Of a stretch of DNA of 64,000 nucleotides, positions 18,010 to 53,102 are shown piece after piece. Made by a program: the position numbers and the translations under genes. Position 1 is the first letter of the stretch. Each line of letters starts with the position of its first letter. Origin of the DNA: Euprymna scolopes (lineage: Eukaryota); the NCBI GenBank assembly GCA_053919585.1, contig CM132803.1. The stretch is one strand, 5' to 3'. The notes beneath the pieces are model-generated. The model saw nothing but the letters and a program-made list of their open reading frames with translations. It did not search any database and was not told the origin of the DNA.

Positions 18010-18350
18010 GTAGGTTTATTTGCATTTAATCTTTATTATTGCAAATTTGTATATTTCATATAATATTAGTATGTTTATTTTAGCATCTTTATTTAAATAA
18101 GTATACATCTGCTACTTTTTACTTCTGTACTTTTGTTTATTCTAGTTTTTTAATGTTAATATTAACAAAATTTTTTCAATCTTTTTAAAATTGATTATGT
18201 TTATTGAAAGTACCGTATGTCATTTTAAGTACGCACTGTTTTTATTTTTGCTCTGTCAAATATTGCATTTTGACTTGTATATTTTTTGTTGTACTTTATA
18301 TGTTTAACTGCTTTTATCATTTCATAAATTATGATTTTCATTTGATTTAG

Positions 18351-18510
18351 ATGTATAATCAAGATATAGCACTGCCATCTAATAGTAATAGAAAAGACAA
18401 AAGGACAGGCAGAATACAAGAATATTCCAGTAGAAGTTCAATAAAATCTCACCTTGATGACAGGCAAGGATGGAACAATGAAAACTCAAGACAGGCTGAG
18501 GTTGCGTCAG
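18351..18510 (+). CDS. Pcdh: Protocadherin gene 3, exon 3
   Basis: tttAG|ATGTATAATCAAGAT; MYNQDIALPSNSNRKDKRTGRIQEYSS...VAS; donor TCAG|GTAAAC. Confidence 0.9.
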
Positions 18511-19435
18511 GTAAACTACATATTTTTCTATATTTTGCTTAATCTTTTATAATAATAATGCTGAATATTATTAATATTATAACTTAATTAATTAATGGTT
18601 GAATGCAAAATATTTTACTTTGATTCTTGCAGTACATTAAGTATTAATTAAACATATTACTGACACAATTAGAAACATATATATTCAGATAAACAGTAGG
18701 GTATAGATTGGTACATCCCAAACTTGATTTCCTGTCAATATAATTACTTAAATCATACATGGGTAATGATATTATATTAAGAGCTATTAAGTAAATCGAT
18801 CAAAAATACAATTAAATAACTTCAAATAGCAAATGTTGGAAGTGTTGAGTTGGAGAAACATTTCAAATAGACTAAGTGCCTCATTTAGCACCATAGCATA
18901 TTTTTGTTTTGAAATGAAAATGTAACCCGTAGATCATGACATGTTTTGGCCAGCCTATTCATGGATGAATAAGTCTGGTCACACTCGGTTGATGTAGGTA
19001 TTCTATGGATACGATGGGATTGGCTTAGTGAGCACGATTGTCTGATGATAGGACAAATATCTGTTTTATAATTTGTGAATAATCATAGTTTTTCAGAGTT
19101 ATAGCAATATTTATCTCCCCTTCTCAGATGTATAATGTTGTCTAGTAAGATAGTTTGTAATTAATATTGGTTTAGAGAATCCAGTGAGATTGCTAGAATA
19201 CAGATGCCCATCTCTATTTGCATAAAGCCGTTATATCCTAGTCATGAAATGTTAGTATTTAACACATGAAAAACAATTAGGACTGACTGAATGGAAAATT
19301 TGTTTTTCTCCAGTTTGTCCAGAAATAGAGAATATGTCATTAATGACTTTCCCATTTAACTGCTAACTTTCTGACTGAAATCAATGTCACATTTGACATA
19401 CCAAAATATCTCCCCTATCCCTTTTGCATCCCTCC

Positions 19436-19523
19436 ATACATTTGCTCGCTCACTGATGAAGATGATACATTTGCTCTCTCACTGATGAAGATGATACATT
19501 TGCTCTCTCACTGATGAAGATGA
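19436..19523. repeat. 29-bp tandem repeat x3
   Basis: ATACATTTGCTCTCTCACTGATGAAGATG starting at 19436, 19465 and 19494. Confidence 0.9.
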
Positions 19524-20049
19524 AACTTTTGTTTGAATCTAAGGAAAAAAATTTTTAAATCCTATAAAATTATTTTAAATTAAATTTAACTGCTTGTTTT
19601 TATCTCTTTATTTTGCTTAAACAAAATATTAATTTATACTTAGAAAACAGATTTTACAAGACATTCTTGTCTCCTTTTATTTTGATTTTTAATAATCATA
19701 TTGCCTTTATGATCATTCTGATGAAGATATCAACTTCACCATGGGAGGTTTATCAATCAGTGTTCCTTACTAGGACTGAGGACCCTAGCATGGAAAGGGG
19801 AGTAACTTTGAGAATTCTTTCTTTTCATTAATACTAATAAATGCATTACTAGTTAATTTTTTTCTTAACTTTTTAAATTTTCTATTTTATTTCTTAACTC
19901 TGTTTCCCATTACACTTATCTGAGTTCACCATTTGATCTAATCATTGCAATAAAATGTTGATTCAGTCCAATTTCTTTATTACACAAAAAGACAAGAACT
20001 ACTCACAAAATTCTTTGAAATGGTTTTCCTAAAAAGATATTTTACAGAG

Positions 20050-48884: not shown

Positions 48885-49576
48885 ATGAAATCCATAGAAA
48901 TATTTTATCATTCTTATTGTTAGTTTAGAAACTTGAAAAAATAAAAATGAATAATAACTACAACATTAATGTATCAACAGAAATTGGTAAACACCATTAA
49001 AATATTACATTATTCACTTAAAGAAATCGGTTACTATTTGTTTCAACTGCACTGATTCATAAATTTAAGTATTTTAAGAATTATATAAAACCATAATTAT
49101 AATATAGAAGATATTTATGTTCTATATTTGATATTGTTAATAAAAGTCAAAGTATTTAGATTTTAATGATTTTTTTTAAATATACTTTAAAGTATGCTGA
49201 AATAAATACAACTAAATTAAATGTAAATTAATGAATTATATAAATAAAATTTAAGAATGCATTACTGTGAATCGTTTTCAATGTTTAAAATTTTTCCCAT
49301 CACATATTAAATAAAGAAAACGTTTCAGTAAAGGTTTCTGTATATACAATTAAAGACAATTGAAACTGCATAAATCTGTTTTCACTTGCTTTAAATTATT
49401 AAAATATTTAAAAACTGATAAATAAATCCTTATATAAAATGATACTGCTAAAAACTTACACATATAATAAGAATATCAGCATTAAAATATTTAAACTTAC
49501 AATCTTGTTCGAAAATGTTACTTAAGATAGAAAGAGAAATATAAAAGAGAAAGGAAGAATAGAATCATTTGACCAT

Positions 49577-49936
49577 TGCATTTTGGGAGTTTATCATAAT
49601 TTTTTTTTTTTAATAATAAAATTGATATAAGTGCCAAATCCTGCTTTTAATTTTATGTATATTTGATAAGAAATAAATTAAAATAAAAAATATGTCTAAA
49701 AATATAAACAAACTTCATTCAAAAGGAGGCTATTTACTGACAATGTTTTATGAAAGAGGAGGGGATGTATAAAGGGAGAGAAGTGAACTGCAGCAGCCAT
49801 TACACAGACGGCACACTACTCAGGACTGCTGTAACTTTAAAAAAGAAATGTACAAATATAACGTTAAAACATAGAAACATCACATATTCTCCATTTAATT
49901 TAACTGGAATTTGAAGGGAGAAGTTTATGAAGAAAG
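49577..49936 (+). promoter_or_regulatory. Putative promoter and non-coding exon 1 of gene 6
   Basis: TGCATTTTGGGA 49577-49588; GCAGCCATT 49793-49801; donor AGAAAG|GTAATT at 49936/49937. Confidence 0.7.
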
Positions 49937-50708
49937 GTAATTTTTCCATTGTTATTTCTTATCTTCATTGGCTTTTATTATTTGTAATGAATAGAAAGAA
50001 AACTGATGTTCTATTTTCTATTGCTAGTTGTTCCAGCCATTGCTTAATGAAATATCTTAAAAGAAAAATACTTAATAAATATTCATCTATTATTTTCTAT
50101 TTCATAAAATATATCAGTTTCCTTATCCTTCTCTTACTTGCTATTATTATTATTAATATTATTATTATTATTATTATTAATATTATTATTATTATTATTG
50201 ACCGAAATATTCATAAATATTTTATTTTTTAATCTCATCTAAGTTTACTCTACTTTTATTTACATTTTTAATATCGTCATTCGCATTTTTTTTATTTTCA
50301 ATTTAATATATAAAAATGTATAGTTGAGGCATTTCCAATGTATTCATAAAAGACACATACAAAAATCATTTATATTTATAATAAGTAATATTTCAACGTT
50401 ATATAGTTATTCTAATAAATTTGGTCAAAATAATAATGGTAAATGCATATCATCAATAAACTAATGTATATATCAGTTGCAGTAAATTTCTCAAGCTATC
50501 AACACATGTGGTCTTATACCAAAATTTTTTTTAGAATAATTATATATTGAATGCAGTAAATGATATCATCTTCATTGTCAAAATCAAAATTTTATAAATA
50601 AAAAATATAAATGAATTCTACTTTTATTAAATATGGCTGTGATTTAACATTTCAGAAACTATTCACAGAACTACATTTCATCATCAAATAAACAACTTAT
50701 TATTCAAC

Positions 50709-53102
50709 ATGGTACTAAAGGAATTATTTGTACTGGTTTGGATGATAAATGCTTGTATGTGTACAGATTTTACATATAATGTGGAAGAAGGAAAAAGTCC
50801 AGATATTTATGTTGGTGATGTTGCTGCTGATTCACATGTGATTAAGGATATTGCTGAGTCTGACCATAAACTCATTGGATTCAGCCTTCTTCATAAAGGG
50901 GCTACTGCGAATTCTCCATTATTTAGAATATCGAAAAGAACTGGAAAACTATACACTGCACAACCATTAGATGCAGAATCTCTTTGTATTTATAAAAAAG
51001 AATGTTTTCAGATGGTGGATGTTGCAGTTAGAAAATCAACAACTGTTTTCAAGTTATTAGAAATCAAAGTAATAATACAGGATATCAATGATCATCAGCC
51101 AGAGTTTCCGGATAAACAAGTTAATGTGAAATTTAATGAAGATGTTGCCATAGGAACTAAAGTATCAATACCAAATGCTATAGACAAAGATGTAGGAATC
51201 ATTAATTCCCAAATTACTTATGAACTAAAAAATACCAAAGATGAACCTTTCATATTATCTACAATGAAGAAAATTGATGGAACAACTGATCTGAGTATAG
51301 AATTAAAACGACTTCTCAACAGAGAAAACAAGGATTCTTATACAATTCAAGTAATTGCAAAAGATGGAGGATCCCCACCAAAACAAAGTGCATTAACTGT
51401 TCACATTTCAATCACAGATGTAAATGATAATGCACCAATATTTTCTAAAAAGGTTTATAATGTTTCTATTGACAGCAAACACAATGAAGCCAAACCAGTT
51501 GTCATATTATCTGCTAAAGATTTAGATTCTGGAGAAAATGGTAAAGTAAAATATCATATTACGGCAAAAACAACTGAAAGCACAAGAAAGACATTTCATT
51601 TAAATGAAATTACTGGAGAATTATTTTTAAATAAAAAAGACATATTAAATAAGGAAGTAATATATGAATTATATGTAGAAGCGAGAGATGGAGGTAATCC
51701 ACCTTTACGATCATTAGCCATGGTTTTTGTAAATGTTATGAACCAGCAAAATAAAGCTCCATTAATAGATGTGAACTTTTTTTCCACATCCAGGGAAAAT
51801 ACAGTTGATGTTTCTGAAAATATAAAAGTTGGTAGTTTCATTGCTTATGTGAAAGTAAGTGATGAGGATGCTGGTCAGAATGGAGAAGTGAACTGTGAAA
51901 TAAAACATGATAAATTTCAATTGCAAAACATGGGAACCAAGAAATACCAAGTTATAGTGAAAACTCTTTTAGACAGGGAAACTGAAGATCATCACAGTAT
52001 AATTATCAAATGTCAAGACAAAGGATCTCCTCCTCTTCAAAGCAAAAGGACATTTTCTGTACATGTGATTGATGTTAATGATGTAGAACCAGTGTTTTCT
52101 AAACAATTATTTAAATTCTTCATTGATGAAAACCAGAGATCGAAAATTCCTATTGGCACAATCAATGCCACAGATCCAGACTTGGGACTTGGAGGTAAAC
52201 TGTCTTTTTCTTTAGTGAGCACCAATAAACAATTTGTACCATTTCGAATCACTGAAAATGGATTAATCTCTTCAATTATGTCTTTAGACCATGAGTTTCA
52301 AGATACTTATAATTTTGAAGTGTTTGTAAAAGACAAAGGAAGTCCATCATTGAATAACACAGTGAATGTGATTGTTAAGGTGAGAGATGAAAATGATAAT
52401 GCTCCATATTTCACATTTCCCAGTGTTAATCCTTATAATATGGATGTAACATATTACCCGCATCATACAAAGAACATCAGCCAGATAAAGGCATCAGACA
52501 GTGACAGTCAAGAGAATGCATTTCTGAAATATGAAATAATCAGAGGCAATAGCAAACAGATATTCAGCATCAACCAGTACACTGGTTTGTTATGTTCAAC
52601 TCATGTCCTAAGCCAACAAGATGCTGGCTCATATGAGCTGGAGTTTCTAGTGAAGGACAGTGGTAGCCCAGTTCTATCAGCCAGAACTACTGTATATTTG
52701 ACACTGACCGTAAGCAACAAGACATCAGAAATGTTAAATGCTGTTAACATCAAAAAAGATAACAAGATCCACCTGACTTCAGCAATTATCATTGTGTCTG
52801 TAGCAGTGACAATAGCTGTGATCATTACAGCTTCAATCTCAGTGTGTATCCTTCGCTGTTGCAATCCTCGAAGTGTTCCAGTAGCAGAAGGCGGATATGT
52901 GAGTAGTGGTCAGAGACATTTGATAAGTCCTCCTTACCCAGCCAATCCTTGGTCTAATGTTGCTCTTCCTACAAGTGATGCAGTTGATATGAGAAGAAGC
53001 AGTCAACCACCAACACCCAGAATGCAAACACATCCTTACTCAAATGCTCAACAAATGCTGTCATCTCAAGCACCAAAACCAGCTTCAGACTCTATTTCTC
53101 AG
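50709..53102 (+). CDS. Pcdh: Protocadherin gene 6, exon 2 CDS; spliced protein 940 aa
   Basis: ATG 50709; acceptor at 50655; six EC repeats and TM; donor CAG|GTAATA. Confidence 0.95.

What the first reader, a model, noticed from the sequence alone, without database searches (positions are those of the whole stretch)
18010..52113. The duplicated unit is offset from the gene: tail of gene n + promoter/head of gene n+1, with breakpoints in the homogenised block
Seen: the tails of genes 3, 4 and 5 form one class (RKD[KR]RTGRIQEYSS, ending PPVPNI*; the 3'UTR starts of genes 3 and 5 are near-identical). The promoters and heads that form one class belong to genes 4, 5 and 6 (EEGKSPDIYVGDVAADS, MGTKKYQVIVKTLLDRE; exon 1 near-identical in genes 4 and 5 and clearly similar in gene 6). 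So 18010-29110, 30103-38717 and 39710-52113 are three copies of a tail+spacer+head unit. Gene 6 has a 4/5-type head on a gene-1-type tail (MYIQD..., PPVPH*), and gene 3 has a distinct head on a 4/5-type tail. Tail1+head2 also resembles tail6+head7. Inference: unequal crossover inside the 956-bp block both changes copy number and re-pairs recognition ectodomains with signalling tails, acting as a built-in recombination hub.
Basis: partly seen in the sequence, partly recalled or inferred. Interest (0 to 1): 0.9.

Follow-up and report, generated by a model that had tools for sequence, protein, structure and literature searches.

The report
Offset duplication units in protocadherin array
In a squid or cuttlefish-type protocadherin gene array, three repeated DNA units each run from the tail of one gene to the head of the next, the classic footprint of an unequal crossover inside a shared near-identical segment; this is a tidy new example of a well-known mechanism, not a new kind of system.

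Summary
The core observation holds. The window carries seven tandem protocadherin genes of a decapodiform cephalopod. Each has four exons: E1 (5'UTR), E2 (2.4 kb: signal peptide, EC1-6, TM), E3 and E4.

- **Block:** a ~956-bp EC5-EC6-TM-juxtamembrane block is ~99% identical in all copies.
- **Classes out of register:** heads of genes 4/5/6 form one clade and tails of genes 3/4/5 another. Gene-for-gene congruence is rejected (p-AU 0.006 and 0.024).
- **Units:** 18010-29110, 30103-38717 and 39710-52113 are homologous from just after the block through intron ends, E3, E4, 3'UTR, promoter, E1 and EC1-4.
- **RNA:** joints confirm that each tail belongs to the upstream head.

The best reading is an anti-Lepore-type unequal crossover in the block. 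Three corrections apply.

1. The chimeras are genes 4 and 5. Genes 3 and 6 are the parental types.
2. Only one crossover must lie in the block.
3. "Tail1+head2 resembles tail6+head7" fails. Only heads 2 and 7 match; tails and promoters do not.

The events are old (noncoding identity 70-75%) and overprinted by mosaic gene conversion across the whole unit. The "hub" idea is plausible, and a second head/tail switch exists in another array, but it is unproven. The N gap lies mid-intron; continuity across it was not shown. The scan's other notes on this window cover the block itself.

The parts
18010..29110 (+). Unit u3: tail of gene 3 (E2-E3 intron, E3 18351-18510, E4 25410-25690 with stop, 3'UTR), the spacer, and E1 (donor 26696), the E2 acceptor 27661 and EC1-4 of gene 4
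   Evidence: Self-BLAST and alignments; exon motifs and splice sites
30103..38717 (+). Unit u4: tail of gene 4 (E3 33803-33965, E4 35247-35527), the spacer, and E1 (donor 36587), the E2 acceptor 37256 and EC1-4 of gene 5
   Evidence: RNA joints 30102|33803 and 33965|35247, both GT..AG; alignments
39710..52113 (+). Unit u5: tail of gene 5 (E3 47007-47166, E4 48610-48884), the spacer, and E1 (donor 49934), the E2 acceptor 50654 and EC1-4 of gene 6; it contains the N gap
   Evidence: RNA joints 47166|48610 and 49934|50654; continuous 84.9% alignment of 35218-39685 with 48586-53081
41632..41882 (.). Assembly gap (N) in the E2-E3 intron of gene 5; not filled
   Evidence: both flanks carry class-Y intron-end homology in order
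17018..17973 (+). Homogenised block, gene 3 copy (left edge of the repeat family)
   Evidence: Variable-site table; sliding identity
29111..30066 (+). Homogenised block, gene 4 copy (junction of a C-type head with a Y-type tail)
38718..39673 (+). Homogenised block, gene 5 copy (junction of a C-type head with a Y-type tail)
52114..53069 (+). Homogenised block, gene 6 copy (right edge of the repeat family)
9068..10023 (+). Homogenised block, gene 2 copy
59899..60854 (+). Homogenised block, gene 7 copy
15613..17017 (+). Head of gene 3 (class B, EC1-4): 85% nt identity and 4-fold divergence 0.20 to class C; its promoter is unrelated to the C promoters
53103..56283 (+). Tail of gene 6 (class X: E3 54238-54400, E4 56018-56283, ends PPVPH*); its intron and 3'UTR are unrelated to class Y
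7660..9067 (+). Head of gene 2 (class A); 99-100% identical to head 7 from ~7745 on, except for an EC2 patch at 8045-8340
58514..59898 (+). Head of gene 7 (class A); a 20-bp deletion at 59221 breaks the frame

Best explanation
The window holds a head-to-tail array of cephalopod protocadherin genes. An ancestral adjacent pair, a gene-3-like gene (head B + tail Y) and a gene-6-like gene (head C + tail X), misaligned. They crossed over unequally inside the shared EC5-EC6-TM-juxtamembrane segment.

The duplication product carried a new chimeric gene, head C on tail Y, between the two parents. This is the anti-Lepore type of duplication. A second unequal exchange then added another copy. That exchange could have fallen anywhere in the repeated ~9-kb unit.

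The result is genes 3 (B,Y), 4 (C,Y), 5 (C,Y) and 6 (C,X). The repeated DNA unit therefore runs from the end of one block to the start of the next: tail, 3'UTR, promoter, 5'UTR exon and EC1-4.

Shown here:
- the class pattern and the tree incongruence;
- homology of the whole inter-block interval;
- the exon-intron structure and which tail belongs to which head;
- the bracket of the switch within the block;
- the block as the only long perfect-identity tract between head classes.

Inferred:
- that the exchange was a crossover rather than a very long conversion;
- the order of events;
- that later gene conversion keeps the block ~99% identical and patches the rest of the unit.
For: - Seven same-strand genes, each with Cadherin_2 plus 5 Cadherin domains. 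The nearest named relatives are PCDH of Acanthosepion pharaonis.
- RNA joints with GT..AG ends link E2 to E3 to E4 within gene 4, E3 to E4 in gene 5, and E1 to E2 in gene 6.
- Head clade (4,5,6) has support 99/99 and tail clade (3,4,5) 97/98. In-register clades are rejected at p-AU 0.006 and 0.024.
- 4-fold divergence is about equal within C heads (0.09-0.11) and Y tails (0.04-0.15), as expected if they were duplicated together.
- Inter-block homology includes both ends of the E2-E3 intron, the E3 flanks, E4, 3'UTR, spacer, and a conserved E1 donor and E2 acceptor.
- No C-type promoter lies upstream of gene 3, and no Y-type intron or UTR lies downstream of gene 6.
- The last head-class site is at -6. 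Inside the block there are only ~45 variable sites, mostly singletons.
- The longest identical runs between head classes are 17-36 bp in the heads against 230-595 bp in the block.
- The same geometry is described for anti-Lepore globin duplications (PMC4041002) and in Fitch's unequal-crossover model of tandem arrays (PMC3283317).
- A second head/tail switch sits in the conserved core of another array of this genome. Adjacent genes P0013 and P0018 share 90% of the post-block and intron-start translation but only 76% of EC1-4, while P0018 is 93% identical to P0015 in EC1-4.
Against: - Intron interiors of the three units are not alignable. The E3-E4 intron of gene 4 vs gene 5 gives z = 0.8, and only exon-proximal stretches match. 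Equal age of all parts therefore rests on the exons, UTRs and spacer.
- Relationships among the three units are star-like and mosaic, so no order of events can be read.
- The block has been homogenised since the events, so no breakpoint is visible. Only a bracket of ~975 bp remains.
- Strictly one block-located crossover suffices.
- The scaffold has estimated-size N gaps, and no long reads were available to confirm the joins across the near-identical blocks. Continuity across 41632-41882 was not shown.
Confidence: 0.68

Rival explanations
1. Four (C,Y) genes arose by whole-gene tandem duplication with boundaries in the spacer. Later the head plus promoter of the first copy, and the tail plus introns plus 3'UTR of the last copy, were replaced by long gene conversions or diverged.
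For: Three homologous spacers between four genes are also expected under this model. Head-only replacement does happen in this array: heads 2 and 7 are 99-100% identical without any flank similarity.
Against: It needs two extra multi-kb replacements that each end in the block. No C-type promoter or E1 remnant lies upstream of gene 3, and no Y-type intron or UTR remnant lies downstream of gene 6. Head 3 differs from class C along its whole length, with 4-fold divergence 0.20.
Confidence: 0.12
2. There was no copy-number change at the block. Pre-existing genes acquired common heads or common tails by non-crossover gene conversion between neighbours, so the classes mark conversion domains rather than duplication units.
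For: Conversion is pervasive: clustered runs of informative sites (z = -7.2), 97-100% patches in the 3'UTR and promoter, and the 2/7 head identity. In another array, adjacent genes share post-block sequence.
Against: The whole 8.6-12.4-kb inter-block interval is homologous, including intron ends and intergenic DNA, at a background identity of only 70-75%. That pattern fits old common descent, not recent conversion. Conversion tracts of that length are not expected (general knowledge).
Confidence: 0.12
3. The offset is an assembly artefact: contigs were mis-joined or mis-ordered across the near-identical blocks, or across the N gap.
For: The scaffold contains three N gaps of estimated size. The blocks are ~99% identical over 956 bp. 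The available DNA run gives only contigs of at most 758 bp on the stretch.
Against: Each unit carries Y-type E3/E4 and a C-type head on one uninterrupted stretch without a block or gap between them, so the tail+spacer+head repeat does not depend on any join across a block. With three (Y,C) units in a linear array, some discordant genes are unavoidable whatever the order. Each block copy keeps private variants. Unique parts have single-copy depth of ~13-20. The units differ by 25-30% in noncoding DNA, so they are not haplotype duplicates.
Confidence: 0.06

Closest known systems
Anti-Lepore-type duplication by unequal crossing-over (HBD/HBB globin fusion genes; Fitch model of tandemly arrayed genes)
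   Same: Misaligned adjacent paralogs cross over in a homologous segment. The duplication product carries a chimeric gene, with the 5' part of the downstream parent and the 3' part of the upstream parent, flanked by both parents. Promoter and flanks travel with their halves. Interparalog conversion blurs the picture afterwards (PMC4041002; PMC3283317).
   Different: Here the exchange segment is a sharply bounded, array-wide homogenised coding block (EC5-TM) inside one large exon. The event was repeated to give three units. No reciprocal deletion allele or polymorphism is known.
Vertebrate clustered protocadherins: regional gene conversion in the variable exons
   Same: Both are tandem arrays of six-cadherin-repeat genes. 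Synonymous divergence is lowest in EC5/EC6 and highest in EC2-EC3, and this is attributed to gene conversion that spares the specificity-determining domains (PMC4978886 citing Noonan et al. 2004).
   Different: Vertebrate alpha and gamma clusters splice variable exons to shared constant exons. Here every gene has its own E3 and E4 (RNA joints), as stated for cephalopods in general (PMC9068888). Tails can therefore be re-paired with heads only at the DNA level.
Cephalopod protocadherin expansions (Albertin et al. 2022; Styfhals et al. 2019)
   Same: [quoted passage not shown] Those papers propose ongoing lineage-specific duplication together with homogenisation by gene conversion (PMC9068888; PMC6339937).
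   Different: In the text I searched, those papers do not describe a bounded homogenised block, head/tail tree discordance or the phase of the duplicated unit.

Membership tests
Protocadherin (cadherin superfamily) | N-terminal Cadherin_2 domain plus tandem cadherin repeats, a single TM segment and a cytoplasmic tail | tested here: met
   Pfam: Cadherin E = 6e-75 with 5 stretches, Cadherin_2 E = 2e-06. A TM segment AIIIVSVAVTIAVIITASISVCIL is present. The best named hits are PCDH of Acanthosepion pharaonis at ~60% identity.
Tandem duplication by unequal crossover (anti-Lepore type) | Same-orientation adjacent paralogs, with chimeric gene(s) lying between the two parental types: 5' part from the downstream parent and 3' part from the upstream parent | tested here: met
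   The order is (B,Y) (C,Y) (C,Y) (C,X).
Tandem duplication by unequal crossover (anti-Lepore type) | The switch point lies in a segment of sequence homology between the parents | tested here: met
   The switch is bracketed between -6 and ~+975 of the block. The block holds the only identical runs above 36 bp between head classes.
Tandem duplication by unequal crossover (anti-Lepore type) | Noncoding flanks co-segregate with their halves (promoter with head; introns and 3'UTR with tail) | tested here: met
   E1 and promoter homology holds only among genes 4/5/6. Intron-end and 3'UTR homology holds only among genes 3/4/5.
Tandem duplication by unequal crossover (anti-Lepore type) | A reciprocal deletion product, or copy-number polymorphism with breakpoints in the same segment | not testable with these tools
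   Only short contigs of one DNA sample were available, and no long-read runs were offered.
Vertebrate-type clustered protocadherin locus | Variable exons spliced to a shared set of constant exons | tested here: not met
   Each gene has its own E3 and E4. RNA joints are 30102|33803 and 33965|35247 and 47166|48610.
Concerted evolution by interparalog gene conversion | Synonymous-site identity in one segment far above that of the flanking coding sequence, with sharp common boundaries | tested here: met
   4-fold divergence is 0.03-0.06 in the block plus the 3' end of E2, against 0.5 in heads of class A vs class C. The 5' boundary is at -6 in all classes.
Concerted evolution by interparalog gene conversion | Mosaic tracts: clustered runs of sites supporting alternative pairings | tested here: met
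   368 runs were observed against 460 +/- 13 expected, z = -7.2. A ~140-bp perfect tract links genes 3 and 5.

The most novel reading that the evidence does not exclude
The EC5-TM block may be an actively used recombination and conversion anchor across the whole cephalopod protocadherin super-cluster. On this reading, crossovers and conversions seeded in it recurrently move EC1-4 recognition heads (with their promoters) onto different cytoplasmic tails and change copy number. Populations would then carry chimeric and copy-number haplotypes. This would be a DNA-level counterpart of the vertebrate constant-exon splicing solution.
Probability: 0.3. Interest if true: 0.65.

Novelty: new member of a known kind. 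Interest (0 to 1): 0.4.

Why it matters
Cephalopods built a very large protocadherin repertoire independently of vertebrates and without shared constant exons. This locus gives a concrete mechanism for how the arrays grow and how ectodomain heads become combined with different tails and promoters. The mechanism is unequal exchange in a homogenised EC5-TM segment, followed by patchy conversion. It also warns that gene trees for this family depend on which part of the gene is used. It is a useful case study, but it does not change what is known about how tandem gene families evolve.

Tried and rejected
- I tried to fetch DNA of the neighbouring 237.5-kb array to repeat the head/tail test on ~20 more genes. 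Only gene tables came back, with no DNA, so only E2-ORF proteins could be compared.
- I looked for the tail of gene 7 in 60894-64000 and found no E3 or E4.
- Tail exons and the juxtamembrane segment gave no Pfam hits.
- The ORF of the intronic repeat at 30676-31233(-) gave no Pfam hit.
- I tried to show that gene 5's E2 is spliced to E3 across the N-gap intron.
- The intron interiors of the three units were tested for homology and are not alignable.
- I rejected the idea that tail1+head2 and tail6+head7 are copies of one unit.
- I rejected haplotype duplication as the source of the three units, because their noncoding DNA differs by 25-30%.
- Literature searches for a described homogenised block or unequal crossover in cephalopod protocadherins found only general statements.

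
Full report
**What the window is.**
The 64-kb window is AT-rich (28% G+C) and has three N gaps, at 5484-5619, 41632-41882 and 53244-53604. It carries seven same-strand genes with a ~2.4-kb open exon. Pfam finds an N-terminal Cadherin_2 domain and five Cadherin repeats. 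The best named relatives are protocadherins of the cuttlefish Acanthosepion pharaonis at ~60% identity. About twenty closer paralogs lie on two other contigs that appear to be from the window's genome (their source fields are masked). The locus is therefore a decapodiform cephalopod protocadherin array.

**Gene structure.**
Each gene has four exons.
- **E2:** ends with a phase-0 donor.
- **E3:** begins ATGTAT (MY.QD...) and ends in phase 1.
- **E4:** completes that codon and runs to PPVPNI* or PPVPH*.
- **E1:** a 5'UTR exon whose AAAG|GTAATT donor and TTTCAG| acceptor are conserved in genes 4, 5 and 6.

RNA contigs from independent runs give GT..AG joints at five places. Gene 4 has 30102|33803 and 33965|35247. 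Gene 5 has 47166|48610, and gene 6 has 49934|50654. So each tail is spliced to the head upstream of it, and there are no shared constant exons. This agrees with what is stated for cephalopods in general (PMC9068888).

**The block.**
From 5-6 nt before the FIDENQRSK codon run, for about 950 bp (EC5, EC6, TM and ~75 juxtamembrane residues), all copies are 96-100% identical per 100-bp window. Heads of different classes are only 60-80% identical.
- The 5' edge is sharp. The last class-specific difference is at -6.
- Inside the block there are only ~45 variable sites, nearly all private to one gene.
- Class-specific differences resume around +950 to +975.
- 4-fold divergence is 0.03-0.06 in the block plus the 3' end of E2. 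It is ~0.5 between heads of classes A and C. The identity is therefore concerted evolution, not protein-level constraint.
- The longest perfectly identical runs between head classes are 17-36 bp in the heads and 230-595 bp in the block.
- DNA word depth over the end of the block is ~875, against 13-20 in unique intron sequence.
- Twenty paralogs from other contigs are 93-99% identical to the window genes in EC6-TM but only ~80% in EC5 and the juxtamembrane part.

The 956-bp block is thus a sub-array-specific extension of a family-wide core.

**Check of the observation.**
- Tails 3, 4 and 5 are 87-91% (E3) and 95-97% (E4) identical to each other. They are 67-80% identical to tails 1, 2 and 6.
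- Heads 4, 5 and 6 are 93-94% identical. Head 3 is 85% identical to them and head 2 is 69%.
- The ML trees give ((h2,h7),(h3,(h6,(h4,h5)))), with the 4/5/6 clade at 99/99. The tail clade (t3,t4,t5) has support 97/98.
- Forcing the in-register clades is rejected. Heads (3,4,5) give p-AU 0.006 and tails (4,5,6) give p-AU 0.024.
  - both ends of the E2-E3 intron; gene 3's whole 340-bp intron matches the first ~90 and last ~120 bp of gene 4's 3.7-kb intron;
  - 100-180 bp around E3;
  - a continuous alignment from ~25 bp before E4 through the 3'UTR, spacer, E1, 5' intron and EC1-4.
- Gene 3 has no C-type promoter, and gene 6 has no Y-type intron or UTR.
- 4-fold divergence is the same in the C heads (0.09-0.11) and the Y tails (0.04-0.15). 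This fits joint duplication.

**What does not hold.**
Tail 1 and tail 6 are not a pair. They are 68% and 73% identical (E3 and E4), with 4-fold divergence 0.46, and tail 1 is nearer to class Y. The shared PPVPH* ending looks ancestral. The shifted clades (t1,t6) and (t2 with Y) are absent from the best tree, although they are not rejected (p = 0.105).

Heads 2 and 7 are 99-100% identical only from ~7745/58596 to the block. A 63-77% patch interrupts this in EC2. Identity drops to noise upstream of the signal peptide and downstream of E2. That is a head-only exchange (gene conversion), not a copy of a tail+head unit. Gene 7 also has a 20-bp deletion at 59221 that breaks the frame.

**The N gap.**
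The gap lies in the E2-E3 intron of gene 5, in AT-rich noncoding DNA next to a 149-bp tandem repeat. No frame crosses it.
- Left of the gap, the intron start matches gene 4's intron start.
- Right of the gap, the intron end matches gene 4's and gene 3's intron ends, in the same order and orientation.
- An RNA contig (run X25) that joins E3 to E4 of gene 5 carries 70 further 5' letters lying outside 46900-47006. That implies an upstream exon, but their identity was not listed.

Continuity is therefore plausible but not shown. I did not try to read or fill the gap. The conclusion does not depend on it. Everything from E3 of gene 5 to EC1-4 of gene 6 lies right of the gap on one uninterrupted stretch.

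**Robustness to mis-assembly.**
Each of the three units holds Y-type E3/E4 and a C-type head with no block or gap between them. The tail+spacer+head repeat is therefore independent of any join across a block. With three such units in a linear array, discordant head/tail genes are unavoidable whatever the order. The units differ by 25-30% in noncoding DNA and in length, so they are not haplotype copies. Each block copy keeps private variants. What remains unverified is the exact neighbour of each unit.

**Mechanism.**
The order (B,Y) (C,Y) (C,Y) (C,X) is the geometry of an anti-Lepore duplication. An unequal crossover between misaligned adjacent paralogs creates a chimera, with the 5' part of the downstream parent and the 3' part of the upstream parent, flanked by both parents (PMC4041002; Fitch model in PMC3283317).
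1. Genes 4 and 5 are the re-paired genes. Genes 3 and 6 are the parental combinations.
2. Only the first event must have crossed over in the block. Once two identical units existed, a second unequal exchange could fall anywhere in them.
3. Exchange is not confined to the block. Among the three units, the three possible site patterns are about equally frequent (219/209/264) but strongly clustered (368 runs against 460 +/- 13, z = -7.2). There are 97-100% patches in the 3'UTR (a ~140-bp perfect match between genes 3 and 5), in the promoter and E1 (genes 4 and 5), and in EC1-4.

The background noncoding identity of 70-75% shows that the duplications are old. Intron interiors have turned over: high-copy repeats sit at 30473-31427, 34293-34483 and 47596-47943 (alignment tests). 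The ~99% identity of the block in all seven genes must therefore be younger than the duplications. It reflects continuing homogenisation that has erased the breakpoints.

**Is the block a hub?**
The window alone demands one block-located crossover, plus one head-only conversion (genes 2 and 7) whose 3' end disappears into the block. Independent support comes from another array of this genome.
- Genes P0013 and P0018 are adjacent. They share 90% of the post-block and intron-start translation and 92% of the juxtamembrane part, but only 76% of EC1-4 and 66% of EC5.
- P0018 matches P0015 at 93% in EC1-4 and 97% in EC5, but only 82% in the juxtamembrane part.

So a second head/tail switch lies in the EC6-TM core. 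Whether that one is a crossover or a conversion cannot be told without DNA. Recurrent exchange anchored in the conserved core is thus likely. An ongoing, copy-number-changing hub remains conjecture.

**Comparison with what is known.**
Regional conversion that homogenises EC5/EC6 and spares EC2-EC3 is established for vertebrate clustered protocadherins (PMC4978886). For cephalopods the literature states tandem duplication plus gene conversion in general terms (PMC9068888; PMC6339937). I found no description of a bounded block, of head/tail discordance, or of the phase of the duplicated unit. The mechanism itself is textbook. I therefore file this as a new member of a known kind, with moderate interest. 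The tails have no recognisable domain, so 'signalling tails' is an assumption.

Noticed in passing
window 58514-60893 (deletion at ~59221): Gene 7's E2 is split into two ORFs by a 20-bp deletion relative to gene 2. It is either a young pseudogene or an assembly error. No E3 or E4 for gene 7 lies in 60894-64000.
   Followed up: partly
window 7745-9067 vs 58596-59898: Heads of genes 2 and 7, 50 kb apart, are 99-100% identical, except for an EC2 patch (8045-8340, 63-77%) and the signal peptide. There is no similarity in promoter, intron or tail. This looks like a recent head-only gene conversion.
   Followed up: yes
window 30473-31427, 34293-34483, 47596-47943, 45928-46275: High-copy repeats sit inside the introns, with summed word depth of 10^3-10^5 against ~15 for unique DNA. 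The first carries a 185-aa reverse-strand ORF (30676-31233) with no Pfam hit, and has an 82% copy in gene 5's intron. These repeats explain the unequal unit lengths.
   Followed up: partly
window 26696/27661, 36587/37256, 49934/50654: Genes 4-6 have a separate 5'UTR exon (E1). Its donor and the E2 acceptor ~55 nt before the ATG are conserved. For gene 6 this is confirmed by one RNA joint. The transcription start and the end of the upstream 3'UTR were not mapped.
   Followed up: partly
window 29900-30090 and paralogs P0001-P0020: The EC6-TM core is 93-99% identical in at least 25 paralogs on three contigs, and DNA depth suggests dozens of copies. EC5 and the juxtamembrane part are homogenised only within the window's sub-array. 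Homogenisation is therefore nested.
   Followed up: partly
other array (ENA contig of 237,501 bp): P0011-P0013-P0018; 807-aa gene-P0015-807-aa gene: Adjacent genes P0013 and P0018 share a near-identical post-block and intron start but have different heads. The P0012-like and P0015-like head types recur as neighbouring pairs, which suggests a two-gene duplication. The gene after P0018 is a fragmented cadherin gene with an HTH_48 (mariner-type) ORF inside it.
   Followed up: partly
window 41974-42351; 44256-44462: A 149-bp tandem repeat (2.6 copies) lies directly right of the N gap, and a (GT)n / 18-bp microsatellite lies in the same intron.
   Followed up: no
window 30054 (RNA loose ends): RNA contigs in two runs match the block up to 30054 and then continue with a different sequence. 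Other expressed paralogs therefore share the same 3' block boundary.
   Followed up: no
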